IMG/VR virus record: IMGVR_UViG_3300030503_000315
Coordinates: 62,001 to 126,000 of that record
Reading direction: 5' to 3' (one strand)
DNA length: 64,000 bases
This document shows positions 41,652-47,181 of the stretch, piece after piece; position 1 is the first letter of the stretch, and the number at the start of each line of letters is the position of its first letter. Under the pieces are notes generated by a model that ran no database searches, was not told the origin of the DNA, and was given only the letters and a program-made list of their open reading frames with translations. Position numbers and translations under genes: made by a program.

Positions 41652-42620
41652 CTATGCGTATGCAGAAGGCTCAAGGTAACTTCTAAGCTTGCTAAACACC
41701 TTGGCGACCTGCACGTCAGTGAAGCCGAAGAACTTTGTTGCTCGATCCAAATATCGATCATACGACATCGAATCGATTGCCAGACTGTTGTCACGTTTCA
41801 GATGCTCCGAGAATTCAACATCATGGCGCCCTGCGCAACACAGAATGAATCTTTGTAGTTCAGGCTGCATCCTCTCTCCAACCTTCACCAGAGTTTCCAT
41901 GTGATCCTTGATATGGCTCAAGTATTCACATGGGGCTGTAACCCTGTTGACATGCAGACTGATATCTTCATGCACTGCTTGGTGTTGCCCATGCTCGTCC
42001 ACATACAACCTATTGCGAACACCATTGACATTCTGCGTTATCATGGTCATCGCTGCATGGTGAATCGTCGTCTTCGCTACGTTTGTCATATGAAGCAATG
42101 ACTTGAACCTCGGGTAGTGCATGTATAGTGCACGAACTGCACGTGCCCTCAACTCTGCATCCAAATCTTCCCTGTTCTCCCCGTAGGAACGACACAAGAA
42201 AATCAACTTCCTTGAAATAAGTTTACCGATGTGCTGGTTCATGTGGTTGCAATGAACCGTATCTTCCACCAACTGATCGAAATCTTCCAACGAGTATGCT
42301 TCGTAATCAAGTGACAGGTGATTGAGATTCAGTCTCCGAAGAAACGAAGCGTCAACCGGATCAACCTCATAGTCTACGGCCCTCGGTTTGGCTATCATAC
42401 CGAATCGGTATTTGTGATAAGCCCAGGCATACAACTTGTAGTTCTTGAGGATCTTCCCTTGCGAACGTGACAGACCAATCAGCCTGTCAGAGAGCTCCTT
42501 GTTGTCGAGCAACTTCTTCATGCGGCGTTGATCGATGCGGTGAAACAGATAGGCGTAGTATGCTCCGCCGACACTGCCCATCTCTGAACGTTTGATTCCA
42601 AACTCTTCGTGAAGTAACAT
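41652..42620 (-). CDS. Hypothetical protein with a possible divergent sigma-70 region-2-like segment
   Basis: YGENREDLDAELRARAVRALYMHYPRF...NVAKTTIHHAAMTMI resembles the sigma2 helix pattern; not confirmed. Confidence 0.35.
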   Translation of the reverse strand: MLLHEEFGIKRSEMGSVGGAYYAYLFHRIDQRRMKKLLDNKELSDRLIGLSRSQGKILKNYKLYAWAYHKYRFGMIAKPRAVDYEVDPVDASFLRRLNLNHLSLDYEAYSLEDFDQLVEDTVHCNHMNQHIGKLISRKLIFLCRSYGENREDLDAELRARAVRALYMHYPRFKSLLHMTNVAKTTIHHAAMTMITQNVNGVRNRLYVDEHGQHQAVHEDISLHVNRVTAPCEYLSHIKDHMETLVKVGERMQPELQRFILCCAGRHDVEFSEHLKRDNSLAIDSMSYDRYLDRATKFFGFTDVQVAKVFSKLRSYLEPSAYA

Positions 42621-42637
42621 TATTCCCCCGACAAGCT

Positions 42638-43351
42638 TCAACCACCGCTGACCATATATTCCATCGTATCAAGACGAGTGCGTCGTTTCTTACGCTGCTC
42701 TTTCTCGATCTTGTCGTGCCATTCGCGTGGCGCCGAGTCGATGGTGGGTGGTTCCCACTTGTCCTTCACTGAAGTCTTCTTGATGATCTGATTCGAGGGA
42801 TCGTGAATCTTGTTCTGATCCTTCAACTCATTCCTCTTTTCAATCCACTGCTTGTGTGTCAAAAGGTCCTGTGCATCTGCAGCAAGATAAGAGATGAACG
42901 ACTGGCCTCGCGACCGATTTGGATTTCCCATCAACATCAATTCACCGCTGCTTGTGTAACCTGAAACGAAACCACAAAGGTAATTCGAGATGAAGTCTTT
43001 GCCGATCTTGAAATACAACTTCGTGCCAATCGGCCACTGCGTCTTCTTTGTTTTTGTTCGTAGAAGTCCCAAAAGGACTCGTCGCTCCGAGAACGAAAAT
43101 GATTGGAAAAGGGTTACAACATGAACGAACTCGTCCGAGTTCTTGGCGATCCTCGTGATGTCAGGTGTAAAACACGATGGTGCGATCCCCACAGCTTTGA
43201 TGCCCAGTTTTGAGCAGACCTCTTGTTTGGAAGAATGTGGATGTTTCTTATGGTGTAGGCATTCCCCACACCTGAAAGCTTCGCCAAGGGATTTGGCTGA
43301 CGCTTTCCCCAAAACGTTTTTCTTGAGCATTGGTCGATACTCATAGTACAA
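42638..43351 (-). CDS. Hypothetical protein with an N-terminal Cys/His cluster
   Basis: CGECLHH...C...C pattern. Confidence 0.65.
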   Translation of the reverse strand: MYYEYRPMLKKNVLGKASAKSLGEAFRCGECLHHKKHPHSSKQEVCSKLGIKAVGIAPSCFTPDITRIAKNSDEFVHVVTLFQSFSFSERRVLLGLLRTKTKKTQWPIGTKLYFKIGKDFISNYLCGFVSGYTSSGELMLMGNPNRSRGQSFISYLAADAQDLLTHKQWIEKRNELKDQNKIHDPSNQIIKKTSVKDKWEPPTIDSAPREWHDKIEKEQRKKRRTRLDTMEYMVSGG

Positions 43352-44097: not shown

Positions 44098-44559
44098 TTA
44101 AGGATCTGGTGTAAAGTGACGCTGATACAGCTGCGCCAATGCGAGGTCATAAATTGCTTCACGAGATTTTGCCTGGGGATAGACACGCTTCAACATCTCG
44201 AGCATATACTGCTTCTTCTGGTCCAGTTCTAGGACAACCATCTTCTTCTTGTTTGGGTCTCCAGACGTTGCCTGGAATGCCATGTAGGCACGTGACGCCA
44301 GCCACAACAACTTCTTCTGCCTTTCGCCAAAGTCTCCGTACAGTAAATCAAAATATGGCTTCTTTGAACTCAAACGGTTTGCAATCTTGTGGAGCTTAGA
44401 GTGATGCATATCACAAAGCGAAACCTGCGGACCATCCACACCACCTGCCTGACGCGGGATGATATGGTGCTCTTCTCTATTTGCTGGGCCAGGCGGGTTC
44501 ACGTCGGAAAAACGCGCGCCACACACCCAACACTCTGGCAGGTTTGCTAGGGGTTGCAT
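44098..44559 (-). CDS. HNH endonuclease with an RHH-like C-terminus
   Basis: CWVC...EEHHIIPRQAGG..GPQVSLCDMHHSKLH; C-terminal MVVLEL strand followed by two helices. Confidence 0.8.
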   Translation of the reverse strand: MQPLANLPECWVCGARFSDVNPPGPANREEHHIIPRQAGGVDGPQVSLCDMHHSKLHKIANRLSSKKPYFDLLYGDFGERQKKLLWLASRAYMAFQATSGDPNKKKMVVLELDQKKQYMLEMLKRVYPQAKSREAIYDLALAQLYQRHFTPDP

Positions 44560-44840
44560 GATGATACCTTTTCGATTCGGCTATGAAACATGAAACTATT
44601 TGCGGTCTTTCCCGCCGTCAGACATATCACGCACTTCCGTACTAGCGACAAGGCACAGTATCAACCGACCCTACGGCGAACCACGCCAAGCATTTTGGGA
44701 AGTCCCAAGGAATATCTATGGAGGTGAAGGTAGCGTATATGCCATCCGGTGTTATTTCTGACAGCAGACACCTCCGGCTGGTCTGCTCCGCGGCAGTCGA
44801 CGTTCCACAGCGGCGTTGACTTGTACATGCGTATTTACTA
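44560..44840 (-). ncRNA. Candidate structured non-coding RNA or long leader downstream of a TAGTAAATA motif
   Basis: About 270 nt with no strong ORF; at least five stem-loops. Confidence 0.3.
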
Positions 44841-44843
44841 TTC

Positions 44844-45347
44844 TCAGTTCGCGGCGTCGACCACGCGCGTTGTGTAGTAATCCATGTCCGGAGCATTGTC
44901 GTATTCTTTGTGGAGAATGATTTCCGCATCGAACATGAGAGGGTAATGGTTCGCGTACAGGGTGTCTGCCCACGAGTTGATGAGAGCACGCCTATGCGGT
45001 TTCATCGTCGGCATGTTGCGCTTGATACAAAGGTATGGGAAATAATGCTCACCGTAAAACGCAGACGGTGCGTGCTCACGAAGTTCCCTGCAGCGGGTAA
45101 GCAGCTGTTCGCTCTGCAGCGGCAGCAGCAAGGAGGTTTCACCCGTCGCCGAATCGTAAAATCTATCCATAGATCCTGCGTCTGCTTTGTAAACCTTCGA
45201 CTCATCTGCTTCCATGATCTCTGTCGAGCTGTTGATCTCTACCGAGAATGATTGCAGGTCCAGATCAATCGGCGATCCGGAGAAAACATTTGATAGGTAT
45301 TCAAGGGTGTCCGGTGTGGGCAACACCACCAACTGATAGATCAACAT
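44844..45347 (-). CDS. gp57B/Acb1-like 2H-phosphoesterase fold with degenerate catalytic motifs
   Basis: TSLLLPLQSEQLLTRCRELR...HYFPYLCI parallels T4 57B as recalled; both HxT motifs are substituted. Confidence 0.55.
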   Translation of the reverse strand: MLIYQLVVLPTPDTLEYLSNVFSGSPIDLDLQSFSVEINSSTEIMEADESKVYKADAGSMDRFYDSATGETSLLLPLQSEQLLTRCRELREHAPSAFYGEHYFPYLCIKRNMPTMKPHRRALINSWADTLYANHYPLMFDAEIILHKEYDNAPDMDYYTTRVVDAAN

Positions 45348-45349
45348 TT

Positions 45350-45649
45350 TTAACCTCGCTGTACCACAGTGTACATATCCTTCAGCTGCGGAAAATGTTC
45401 AAGCAAGTAATTCACACCTTGCCCTCTTGCTACCCGCATCTCTACGTTCGTACTTTTCGGATCGAATGGATAGCAACCGTCAGGCATAGCCACCTCCATG
45501 TAAATCTGATCCGTTCCTGCTCCGGTCACAATCGTAACCTTGATTACCGTCATGTAAACGAGTGGCATTTCATCCTCAGAATGCGAAACCGAATCGATCA
45601 ATCTTGACGTGGCCACCTGCGAATGCCCGGGCAAATGCCGAAAGATCAC
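45350..45649 (-). CDS. Hypothetical protein
   Basis: ORF; probable internal start. Confidence 0.55.
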   Translation of the reverse strand: MIFRHLPGHSQVATSRLIDSVSHSEDEMPLVYMTVIKVTIVTGAGTDQIYMEVAMPDGCYPFDPKSTNVEMRVARGQGVNYLLEHFPQLKDMYTVVQRG

Positions 45650-46577
45650 GCTCGGTCATTAACCAAAACCATGAACCCCCAGTTGCACCATAAGGTCTAT
45701 CCAGTACGAAGAAGTACTTTTGTCCTGTTTGCTTTTCGATCATCTTCTTGATCTCTGTAGCCTTGGCTATGATTTTCTTTGGATCAACCTGACGTTCAAT
45801 CGCACCCTTTCGCAACTCGAGGAACGATTTGTTGATACCCAGAACCAACTGGTTGTGGATCACGTTGTAGTCACCGACCTTGACGATGTCGAATCCAGCC
45901 TTCTTCAGACTCGGCGTATTCAAAGGACCCTTGATGAGGGGTACGACCGGAACCCGGGTTAACACAAACGGTTTCTTCTGGAGAGCAGAAATGTTTTCAG
46001 ACTCCTTCTGCGTTTGCTTCAGGACCTTTCCGAATTCATCCAGGATCTTTTCCTCTGATTCCTCGACACGCACTTCATTCTCTTTGCCAACCGAGGCAAT
46101 CGCCTTGTTGGTCGACTCAATCAACGCCTCAACATGCTTCACCGCTTTACGGCATGCAAGGATGGACAACGTCTTCTTGTCCACGGCAGCACCAATGAAT
46201 ACTCCTTCGCGCAGGGAAGTAAGCTCGTTGGAGCATGATCTTAGAGCCTTGCTGACACCGAGTGGTGGTTTGTTTTCCATGATGGTTGTCACCGACTTCA
46301 GTGCTGCGGTGAGTCGCTTCAACTGCTCAGGTTTTTCTACCACGTACAACTTCGACACCTTCAGTACTGCTTTGTCCAACTTGGCCTTGAGTTTGATTAG
46401 AGCATTTTTCTTAGCTTCCAACTTCGCCTTGATCTGTGAATCTTCGGGTGCTTTTTTAGCACGAAGTTCCAGTTGAGGCAACAACTTATTCAACTGTGAT
46501 TGATTCTTCGAGATCAGGTTGTTGCCCGCCTGAAATCTGTCAAAGTTTGAATCAGCTACTCGCTGTAGATTCTTCAT
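45576..46577 (-). CDS. Basic coiled-coil hypothetical protein
   Basis: 333 aa, K-rich helical N-terminal half. Confidence 0.72.
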   Translation of the reverse strand: MKNLQRVADSNFDRFQAGNNLISKNQSQLNKLLPQLELRAKKAPEDSQIKAKLEAKKNALIKLKAKLDKAVLKVSKLYVVEKPEQLKRLTAALKSVTTIMENKPPLGVSKALRSCSNELTSLREGVFIGAAVDKKTLSILACRKAVKHVEALIESTNKAIASVGKENEVRVEESEEKILDEFGKVLKQTQKESENISALQKKPFVLTRVPVVPLIKGPLNTPSLKKAGFDIVKVGDYNVIHNQLVLGINKSFLELRKGAIERQVDPKKIIAKATEIKKMIEKQTGQKYFFVLDRPYGATGGSWFWLMTERDLSAFARAFAGGHVKIDRFGFAF

Positions 46578-46722: not shown

Positions 46723-47181
46723 TTACGCGAGATCGAGCATGAAGCTCTTGTCCTTCTTCGCGCCAGCCTTCTTGACTACTTTTTTCGCCGCAACCTTCTT
46801 GACCACCTTCTTCATGGTCGGCTTGGTGCCCGTCTTCTTCGCTACCTTCTTGGCTGCGACCTTGACCTTGACCTTGACCTTCTTCGCAGTCTTCGCCGGT
46901 GCTTCTTCATCGTCTTCCACTTCTTCAACCTTCGAAGCGCGGGTCGACTTGCGTGCTACCTTCTTCGCGGCACCACGCGTCGTCTTCTTTGCAGCCGGAC
47001 CACGACCCCCGACCTTCTTCTTGGCCTTCGCTGCCTTGATTGCCTCGCGCAGTTTGGCGATGGTCAGTTCTTTCTTTTCCAATGTCTTCTCGAGACGCAC
47101 GTTGGTGCGCAGGATCTTGCCGAATTGACCGGCGGCTTGACGAAGGACAGCGGAAGGGTTAGATGCTTTTTGCGTTGCCAT
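46723..47181 (-). CDS. Histone H1-like K/A-rich DNA-binding protein
   Basis: Repeated KKVA(A/V)KK units with a central EEVEDDEE acidic island. Confidence 0.82.
   Translation of the reverse strand: MATQKASNPSAVLRQAAGQFGKILRTNVRLEKTLEKKELTIAKLREAIKAAKAKKKVGGRGPAAKKTTRGAAKKVARKSTRASKVEEVEDDEEAPAKTAKKVKVKVKVAAKKVAKKTGTKPTMKKVVKKVAAKKVVKKAGAKKDKSFMLDLA

What the first reader, a model, noticed from the sequence alone, without database searches (positions are those of the whole stretch)
44844..45347. Acb1/gp57B-like anti-CBASS fold with both catalytic HxT motifs apparently lost: a possible cyclic-nucleotide sponge
The sequence parallels T4 gp57B/Acb1 as I recall it: TLEYLSNV vs TLDALEEL; SFSVEINSS vs KIHSTICYS; TSLLLPLQSEQLLTRCRELR..HYFPYLCI vs STLVLVLDSEYLRCRH..R..DYTPHITL. 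The two catalytic His align to Ser and Tyr. Known: Acb1 is a 2H phosphodiesterase that destroys CBASS signals, and other anti-defence proteins (Acb2, Tad1) act as sponges. Inference: a pseudo-enzyme that binds rather than cleaves immune second messengers, or a repurposed RNA-binding protein (it sits next to the candidate ncRNA).
Basis: partly seen in the sequence, partly recalled or inferred. Interest (0 to 1): 0.7.

Follow-up and report, generated by a model that had tools for sequence, protein, structure and literature searches.

The report
Catalytically dead Acb1-like phage protein
A jumbo phage from peat carries a well-conserved relative of the anti-CBASS enzyme Acb1 that has lost all four catalytic residues yet is kept under strong selection in a core gene cassette, so it probably binds something rather than cleaving it; what it binds is unknown.

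Summary
Window 44844-45347 (-) is a real 167-aa gene. Its AlphaFold model (pLDDT 88) matches Acb1 crystal structures best (Z 15.8 and 13.3; other 2H enzymes 10.4 or less). Profile-profile comparison with canonical Acb1 gives 98.7%, E 4e-16.

What is new: it belongs to a large family (95 of 117 aligned cluster representatives lack both HxT motifs). The gene sits in a five-gene cassette conserved across RSL1-like jumbo phages. Relatives with intact histidines occupy the same slot, so catalysis was lost, more than once (AU p 0.019). dN/dS is 0.04-0.08. Three related phages keep this protein together with an intact Acb1 elsewhere. In the target's subfamily the old cleft is still more conserved than the rest, with new residues (Y35, E37, N39, S41, Y98, Y157).

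The pseudo-enzyme reading is supported. The sponge function is untested and the evidence is mixed: a Glu sits at the phosphate site, net charge is -12, and the gene has core-gene context. The RNA-binding alternative fails, because the adjacent RNA-like element lies in a ~220-nt insertion absent from the closest relatives. I found no published description.

The parts
44844..45347 (-). The finding: a 167-aa catalytically dead Acb1-type 2H-fold protein (P0001).
   Evidence: ORF. AF2 model pLDDT 87.8, pTM 0.84. Acb1 structures are the best matches. hhalign 98.7% to canonical Acb1. dN/dS 0.04-0.08.
45237..45245 (-). Former first HxT motif, now S35-V36-E37 (equivalent to T4 H44-S-T46).
   Evidence: Alignment columns. 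In the RSL1-like subfamily position 35 is Tyr in 70% and position 37 is Glu in 83%.
45027..45035 (-). Former second HxT motif, now Y105-L106-C107 (equivalent to T4 H113-I-T115). The preceding Y102-x-P104 frame is kept.
44847..44903 (-). C-terminal extension (residues about 149-167; predicted helix 155-166) with conserved P153 and Y157/Y158. It sits where the T4/FBB1 Acb1 lid is.
   Evidence: Secondary structure. VIA alignments end at model residue 148-154. Position 157 is aromatic in 84% of His-less members.
45576..46577 (-). Cassette partner w333 (333 aa, unknown function), always directly upstream of the 2H-like gene.
   Evidence: BLASTP to the upstream genes of L012, L014, L015, L017, L018 and L019. 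No family or Atlas lead.
45350..45568 (-). Small 72-aa ORF between w333 and the target. It is present only in the closest relatives.
   Evidence: Genes of 72 and 71 aa lie at the same place in L024 and L025. In the window it is listed as a 99-aa GTG ORF.
44098..44559 (-). Cassette partner w153, an HNH-like zinc-finger protein, always directly downstream.
   Evidence: 41-51% identity to the downstream genes of L011, L014, L015 and L018. Weak HNH hit. Annotated as HNH or homing endonuclease in relatives.
42638..43351 (-). Cassette partner w237 (unknown function; PHROG labelled 'DNA topoisomerase').
   Evidence: phrog_17701 at 5e-49. Conserved in L011, L014, L015 and L018.
41652..42641 (-). Cassette partner w329, a sigma-70-like factor.
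   Evidence: Atlas feature score 0.96 with Sigma70_r2/r4 clusters and sigma-factor structural hits. Conserved in L014, L015 and L018.
44605..44824 (-). Insertion of about 220 nt, specific to this phage, between the target's stop codon and w153. It holds the Proteo-phage-1-like element at 44741-44819. It is not part of the protein's conserved context.
   Evidence: Alignment with L024 and L025. RF03044 at 27.2 bits against a gathering score of 42. Single copy in the genome.

Best explanation
The gene encodes a catalytically inactive descendant of an Acb1-type 2H phosphodiesterase. It keeps the compact 2H fold and the U-shaped cleft. All four residues of the acid-base tetrad are replaced (H->S, T->E, H->Y, T->C), so the 2H cleavage chemistry cannot run. 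This much is shown. The gene is a core gene of RSL1-like jumbo phages. It sits between w333 and an HNH-like protein in a five-gene cassette next to topoisomerase and a sigma-like factor, and it is under strong purifying selection. This is also shown. Positional orthologues in related phages still carry both HxT motifs, so the slot once held an active enzyme, and catalysis was lost more than once. This is inferred from synteny, the tree and an AU test. How it most likely works is inference: it binds rather than cleaves, through the re-specified cleft. That cleft has a polar strand face (Y/S35, E37, N39, S41), K109, and aromatic residues at or near the old base-stacking positions (F63/Y64, Y98, Y157). 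The ligand is not identified. A nucleotide-type molecule is my first guess because of the ancestry and the retained aromatics. A partner protein from the cassette is the main alternative.
For: Fold and homology. Loss of the tetrad. Defining Acb1 residues from PMC9117128. Family size and motif census (15 with both motifs, 7 with only the second, 95 with neither). 32 of 117 members hit Pfam Acb1 directly. Conserved cassette. His-intact members P0070, P0083 and P0063 occupy the same slot. Recurrent loss: the tree and an AU test rejecting a single clade of intact proteins, p 0.019. Purifying selection: dN/dS 0.04-0.08, like the neighbouring genes. Not redundant with the enzyme: BCSR5, BcepSaruman and Motura carry an intact Acb1 elsewhere as well as this protein. 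Cleft still constrained: in the RSL1-like subfamily the cleft positions have a mean top-residue frequency of 0.76 against 0.62 for the rest, reached by 99 of 5000 random position sets. Subclade B shows the same with a different residue set (19 of 5000).
Against: No binding was measured or modelled (one search gave no result). Across the whole His-less clade the active-site neighbourhood is relaxed: positions 5, 35, 141 and 147, with no residue above 29% at position 35. One subclade shows no cleft constraint at all. My cleft set comes from the alignment to T4 contact residues and from strand periodicity, not from coordinates, and it includes scaffold residues (Y64, D65, Y102) that are conserved everywhere. 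Glu at the phosphate-binding position and a net charge of -12 sit poorly with binding a polyanionic ligand in the ancestral pose. The AU-test group was named after the tree had been seen, and long branches are present.
Confidence: 0.5

Rival explanations
1. Immune-signal sponge: the protein sequesters CBASS, Pycsar, Thoeris or type III CRISPR nucleotide messengers stoichiometrically instead of cleaving them.
For: It descends from Acb1-type cyclic-oligonucleotide phosphodiesterases. Aromatics are kept at the W74 and W147 equivalents, and Y98 lies near the F107 equivalent. The cleft is constrained within subfamilies but differs between them, as expected for arms-race specificity. It coexists with an active Acb1 in three phages, which could mean complementary targets. 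Known decoy-signal systems punish degradation of signals (10.1101/2025.08.21.671373).
Against: T4 Acb1 H44A/H113A does not protect against CBASS effectors (PMC9117128). Glu replaces the phosphate-binding Thr, and the protein has pI 4.7. The gene is a syntenic, often translationally coupled core gene in a replication/transcription region, unlike typical accessory anti-defence genes. It has no similarity to known sponge folds. No binding data exist (one search gave no result).
Confidence: 0.2
2. Protein-binding subunit or adaptor of the conserved cassette: the 2H scaffold is reused to bind w333 and/or the HNH-like w153 (or host RNA polymerase together with the sigma-like w329), with no small-molecule ligand.
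For: The order w333 - 2H-like - w153 holds even at 27-36% identity, often with overlapping stop and start codons. The pocket is relaxed clade-wide. Some features are conserved only in the His-less clade: P76, P153, and aromatics at 98 and 157. A non-catalytic structural 2H protein has a precedent in the trypanosome mitoribosome (6hiw_DQ, Z 8.3).
Against: Synteny among related phages may only reflect common descent. The closest relatives have an extra 72-aa gene between w333 and the target, and this phage has a 220-nt insertion before w153, so tight coupling is not obligatory.
Confidence: 0.22
3. Still an enzyme, using non-canonical residues (for example Tyr/Glu/Lys in the cleft) for a different reaction.
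For: E37, N39, S41, Y98 and K109 are well conserved in the RSL1-like subfamily.
Against: These residues are not conserved across the His-less clade. Positions 35 and 105 vary even among close relatives (S/Y/F/H and Y/F/H/N). No known 2H enzyme works without the histidines (established knowledge of the 2H superfamily; PMC9117128 for Acb1).
Confidence: 0.06
4. RNA-binding protein serving the adjacent candidate ncRNA.
For: A Proteo-phage-1-like element lies 25 nt after the stop codon.
Against: The element lies in an insertion absent from the closest relatives and from RSL1, BCSR5, Saruman and Motura. It scores below the gathering threshold (27 against 42 bits). The gap has no excess folding stability (z -0.24). 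The protein has a net charge of -12.
Confidence: 0.02

Closest known systems
Anti-CBASS protein Acb1 (T4 gp57B; Erwinia phage FBB1 Acb1, PDB 7T26/7T27; Burkholderia phage BCSR5 Acb1 = 2H PDE-9, PDB 9Q2G/9Q2Y; Pfam PF23474)
   Same: Same compact 2H fold (Z 13-16, TM 0.6-0.73). Homologous by profile-profile comparison (98.7%). Same strand register, the same Y-x-P frame before the second motif, and aromatics at the W74 and W147 equivalents. Same size, and encoded by phages.
   Different: All four tetrad residues are replaced. There is no hit to the Pfam model. Stacking residue Y12 is lost. There is no N-terminal lid, and the C-terminal extension is predicted to be a helix. It is a fixed core-cassette gene rather than a sporadic accessory gene. 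It coexists with a true Acb1 in three phages.
His-intact cassette orthologues (for example P0070 on L018, P0083 on L017), uncharacterised metagenomic Acb1-family proteins
   Same: Same slot between the w333 and w153 homologues, same length, 27-31% identity.
   Different: They keep both HxT motifs plus a conserved His at position 5, Gly141 and Ser147, and they hit PF23474. They are presumably active enzymes.
AKAP18 (AKAP7) central domain, a 2H-fold domain that binds 5'-AMP (PDB 2VFK)
   Same: A 2H fold used for nucleotide binding with no demonstrated catalysis. It is a structural match at Z 8.0.
   Different: AKAP18 keeps its HxT motifs, is eukaryotic, and is only distantly related.
Phage nucleotide sponges Acb2, Acb4, Tad1 and Tad2
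   Same: They would share a mode of action only if the sponge idea is right.
   Different: No fold or sequence relationship. None appears among the structural matches. Those proteins are oligomers with dedicated pockets (knowledge of the field, not tested here).

Membership tests
2H phosphoesterase superfamily | Two-lobed alpha+beta fold with a central cleft between two beta-sheets | tested here: met
   All top PDB matches are 2H proteins. 43 chains score Z>=8, and Acb1 structures score Z 13-16.
2H phosphoesterase superfamily | Two H-x-T/S motifs on the central strands | tested here: not met
   The motifs read S35-V-E37 and Y105-L-C107. There is no HxT/S anywhere in P0001-P0016.
Acb1 (Pfam PF23474) | Score at or above Pfam's gathering cut-off (27 bits) | tested here: not met
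   No hit at E<=10, and none in the whole genome. The BCSR5 orthologue gets 11.8 bits. T4 gp57B scores 202.7 bits.
Acb1 (Pfam PF23474) | Homology to canonical Acb1 detectable by profile methods | tested here: met
   hhalign 98.7%, E 3.9e-16. The target-family profile retrieves His-intact PF23474 members at E 1e-15 to 1e-5.
Acb1 (Pfam PF23474) | Catalytic tetrad H44/T46/H113/T115 (T4 numbering; PMC9117128) | tested here: not met
   The four positions are S, E, Y and C.
Acb1 (Pfam PF23474) | Base-stacking aromatics Y12, W74, F107, W147 and the adenine contact E141 | tested here: inconclusive
   W74->F63 and W147->Y157 stay aromatic. Y12->Q5 and E141->N151 are lost. F107 aligns to G99, with F97/Y98 beside it. 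The alignment of the loops and the C-terminus is uncertain.
Acb1 (Pfam PF23474) | Flexible terminal lid that closes over the ligand | tested here: inconclusive
   There is a C-terminal extension of about 19 residues, predicted to be a helix at pLDDT about 86. Whether it acts as a lid or plugs the cleft needs coordinates.
Acb1 (Pfam PF23474) | Cleaves 3'3'-cGAMP and related cyclic oligonucleotides and protects phage from CBASS | not testable with these tools
   Needs biochemistry and plaque assays.
Phage nucleotide sponges (Acb2, Acb4, Tad1, Tad2) | Homology or shared fold with a known sponge family | tested here: not met
   None appears among the Foldseek or VIA matches. There is no Pfam or PHROG hit.
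Phage nucleotide sponges (Acb2, Acb4, Tad1, Tad2) | High-affinity, non-hydrolytic binding of an immune nucleotide signal | not testable with these tools
   The co-folding job with 3'3'-cGAMP was not folded and gives no evidence.

The most novel reading that the evidence does not exclude
A large, undescribed family of Acb1-derived decoys: jumbo phages repeatedly converted a core-cassette cyclic-oligonucleotide phosphodiesterase into a non-hydrolytic binder. Each subfamily's cleft was re-specified for a different host signal. The result sequesters immune messengers without producing the signal depletion or cleavage products that decoy-sensing defences such as Panoptes detect, and it works alongside a conventional Acb1.
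Probability: 0.15. Interest if true: 0.85.

Novelty: new variant of a known kind. Interest (0 to 1): 0.6.

Why it matters
Acb1 is the founding enzyme of phage anti-CBASS evasion, and recent surveys of viral 2H phosphodiesterases kept only hits with intact histidines (10.1101/2025.08.21.671373: 75 of 84 hits). This work shows that the discarded class is not noise. At least 95 clusters at 50% identity are His-less relatives. They are under strong purifying selection, fixed in a core cassette of RSL1-like jumbo phages of Burkholderiales, and derived more than once from active positional orthologues. That gives a natural, repeated enzyme-to-pseudo-enzyme series with matched active and inactive orthologues, which can be tested directly: does binding alone suffice, and for what ligand? 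If the ligand is an immune signal, this adds a new route to sponge evolution. If it is a cassette partner, it is a case of an anti-defence fold being recruited into core phage replication or transcription machinery.

Tried and rejected
1. Pfam, PHROGs, NCBIfam and PDB-sequence searches of the target found nothing. 2. Pairwise BLASTP against T4 Acb1 was not significant. I rebuilt it as A2 from permitted proteins only. Complexes with w333 or w153 and homo-oligomers could therefore not be tried. 5. The search for related loci with the 117-row alignment failed for lack of a conserved stretch. With A1 it gave only four loci. 6. The search for RNA runs found one soil metatranscriptome that laid nothing on the stretch, so expression is unknown. 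7. Pfam, PHROG and Atlas searches of w333 and w237 gave no usable lead. 8. My first literature query was too loose and returned irrelevant papers. 9. The supplements of Doherty et al. do not mention RSL1, Motura, Saruman or BCSR5 by name. 10. The phiMatilda omics preprint could not be mapped to the orthologue without its sequence. 11. I rejected the decaying-pseudogene reading because of dN/dS 0.04-0.08 and conservation across genera. 12. I rejected the reading of w153 as a homing endonuclease (as annotated in relatives), because it is syntenic and 41-51% identical across very distant loci.

Full report
**Observation.** The window has an ATG-started ORF at 44844..45347 on the minus strand. It is 167 aa long, with GAGG 8-11 nt upstream of the start. 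Pfam, PHROGs, NCBIfam and a sequence search of the PDB return nothing for it. Pairwise BLASTP between the two proteins is not significant (E 4.2). Pfam's Acb1 model PF23474 scores T4 gp57B at 202.7 bits but does not hit the target.

**Source of the window.** The window is part of a 215-kb virus record, 91% complete, recovered from peat metagenomes. An independent contig from a DNA run reproduces the region without differences. The protein has orthologues in the jumbo phages Ralstonia phiRSL1 (ORF007, 56% identity), Burkholderia BcepSaruman and BcepSauron (41%), Burkholderia BCSR5 (40%) and Achromobacter Motura (36%). All are annotated as hypothetical proteins.

**Fold and homology.** An AlphaFold2 model built from 14 homologues is confident (pLDDT 87.8, pTM 0.84).
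- Foldseek against the PDB ranks the BCSR5 phosphodiesterase 9Q2Y/9Q2G first (E 1.4e-7), then FBB1 Acb1 7T26/7T27 (E 1.4e-5), then plant CPDase, Usb1, the poxvirus cGAMP PDE and LigT.
- VIA-align gives Z 15.8 and 13.3 for the two Acb1 proteins, against 10.4 or less for other 2H enzymes.
- BFVD returns the RSL1 and Motura orthologues, then a long list of proteins named Anti-CBASS protein Acb1.
- A profile-profile comparison of the target family with six canonical Acb1 proteins gives 98.7% probability, E 3.9e-16, over 131 columns.

In that alignment, and in a 117-sequence MAFFT alignment, T4 H44, T46, H113 and T115 fall on S35, E37, Y105 and C107.

**The crystallised BCSR5 protein is a paralogue, not the orthologue.** 9Q2G is encoded about 143 kb away from the target's BCSR5 orthologue. 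It has HVT50 and HLT123 and is deposited as Acb1. It is 2H PDE-9 of Doherty et al. (10.1101/2025.08.21.671373). BcepSaruman and Motura likewise carry an intact Acb1 at another locus (HVT55/HLT126 and HCT54/HIT126) as well as the His-less protein. phiRSL1 and the window's own genome carry only the His-less one, in a single copy.

**A large family.** An exhaustive profile search of 1.84 billion cluster representatives found 105 proteins at E<=1e-3. I aligned them with the phage orthologues and with T4 and BCSR5 Acb1, giving 117 rows. Of these, 15 have both HxT/S motifs, 7 have only the second, and 95 have neither. Thirty-two rows hit Pfam Acb1 directly. On a tree built without the motif columns, the target lies deep in a 94-row clade (SH-aLRT 88) made of 87 rows with no motif, 6 with only the second and 1 with both. 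The remaining 23 rows hold 14 of the 15 intact proteins. The sample is biased by the His-less query profile, so these proportions say nothing about Acb1 as a whole.

**A core cassette with active orthologues in the same slot.** Four genera of cultured phages share the gene order topoisomerase, two hypotheticals, a ~330-aa protein, the 2H-like gene, an HNH-like ~150-aa protein.
- Metagenomic contigs carrying distant His-less members (27-36% identity) still have the homologous neighbours w333 upstream and w153, w237 and w329 downstream, often with overlapping stop and start codons.
- w329 looks like a sigma-70-type factor.
- P0070, P0083 and P0063 have both HxT motifs; P0070 and P0083 also have Pfam Acb1 hits on record. 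All three sit in the same slot, flanked by w333 and w153 homologues.

The slot therefore once held an active Acb1-type enzyme, and the catalytic residues were lost later. An AU test rejects a tree in which all intact proteins form one group (p 0.019), which points to more than one loss. Two caveats apply: the group was defined after the tree had been seen, and long branches are present.

**Selection.** Against the two closest relatives (88% and 85% identity), dN/dS is 0.04-0.08. dS is 1.5-2.2, so the values are approximate. The neighbouring core genes show the same range. The protein is functional.

**Where the constraint lies.**
- Scaffold residues are conserved equally in His-less and intact proteins: P10, T14, Y53, Y64, D65, S79, R85, Y102, P104, R/K120, S125, F139 and E142.
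- Across the whole His-less clade the active-site neighbourhood is relaxed. Position 35 has no residue above 29%. The intact group's conserved His5, Gly141 and Ser147 are lost.
- Within the target's RSL1-like subfamily the cleft positions are more conserved than the rest (0.76 against 0.62; 99 of 5000 random sets reach that mean). The new residue set is Y35 70%, E37 83%, N39 96%, S41 91%, Y98 96%, K109 65% and Y157 74%.
- A second subclade shows the same effect with GVELGS, W63, W98 and F157 (19 of 5000). A third subclade shows none.
- Of the Acb1 ligand contacts described by Hobbs et al. (PMC9117128), the W74 and W147 equivalents stay aromatic, while Y12 and E141 are lost.
- The protein is acidic (pI 4.66, net charge -12), has no N-terminal lid, and has a C-terminal extension of about 19 residues predicted to be a helix.

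**Interpretation.** Three things are shown: the protein is a catalytically dead Acb1-type 2H protein, it is maintained by selection, and it sits in a core cassette. It is inferred that it works by binding through a re-specified cleft.

The co-folding job with 3'3'-cGAMP was not folded. Several points argue against a simple sponge:
- Engineered H44A/H113A Acb1 does not protect (PMC9117128).
- A Glu sits where phosphate was bound.
- The protein carries a strong negative charge.
- The gene has core-gene context.

The main rival is a role as a protein-binding subunit of the cassette.

The RNA-binding alternative fails. The Proteo-phage-1-like match at 44741-44819 scores 27 bits against a gathering score of 42. 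It lies in a ~220-nt insertion that is absent from the two closest relatives and from the cultured phages. It is single-copy in the genome. The intergenic gap folds no better than shuffled sequence (z -0.24).

**Novelty.** I found no paper describing His-less Acb1-like proteins. Doherty et al. found 84 structural hits among phage proteins and kept the 75 with intact histidines. I rate this as a new variant of a known kind: a recurrent, selected pseudo-enzyme branch of the Acb1 family.

Noticed in passing
window 44741-44819 (-), inside an insertion at about 44605-44824: A full-length but sub-threshold match to Rfam RF03044 Proteo-phage-1 RNA (27.2 bits against a gathering score of 42). It keeps the conserved AGCCGG and GAAAUAACACCGG stretches. 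It lies in a ~220-nt insertion absent from the closest relatives L024 and L025, which looks like a small mobile element carrying the motif.
   Followed up: partly
window 41652-42641 (-): w329, the last gene of the cassette, resembles sigma-70-family factors (Atlas feature score 0.96 with Sigma70_r2/r4 clusters, plus sigma-factor structural hits), although Pfam finds nothing. It is probably a phage-encoded sigma factor.
   Followed up: partly
window 44098-44559 (-): The HNH-like protein is annotated as a homing endonuclease in related phages. It is in fact a fixed, syntenic core gene, 41-51% identical even in very distant loci and more conserved than its neighbours. It is probably not a homing endonuclease.
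   Followed up: partly
window 46723-47181 (-): A 152-aa protein rich in lysine and alanine, with a weak match to the Burkholderia histone H1-like DNA-binding family (E 0.18). It is conserved at this position in relatives.
   Followed up: no
L026 2338-2747 (relative with P0007): In this relative, two extra genes sit between the 2H-like gene and the HNH-like gene, one of them an acyl-carrier-protein-like gene (PP-binding). The junction after the 2H-like gene seems to be a hot spot for insertions.
   Followed up: no
L015 3614-5904 and 7443-7509 (distant relative with P0026): Just downstream of the cassette lie a PTPS-family gene (suggestive of 7-deazaguanine-type base modification, untested), an NAD-dependent DNA ligase, and a gene with a Pfam 'Sequestin' hit.
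   Followed up: no
L006 (BCSR5 197.7-198.1 kb), L008 (BcepSaruman 168.1-168.5 kb), L009 (Motura 125.0-125.4 kb): Canonical Acb1 genes with intact motifs in three jumbo phages. In the Saruman and Motura loci I checked only that the ORFs are intact, not how the records annotate them.
   Followed up: partly
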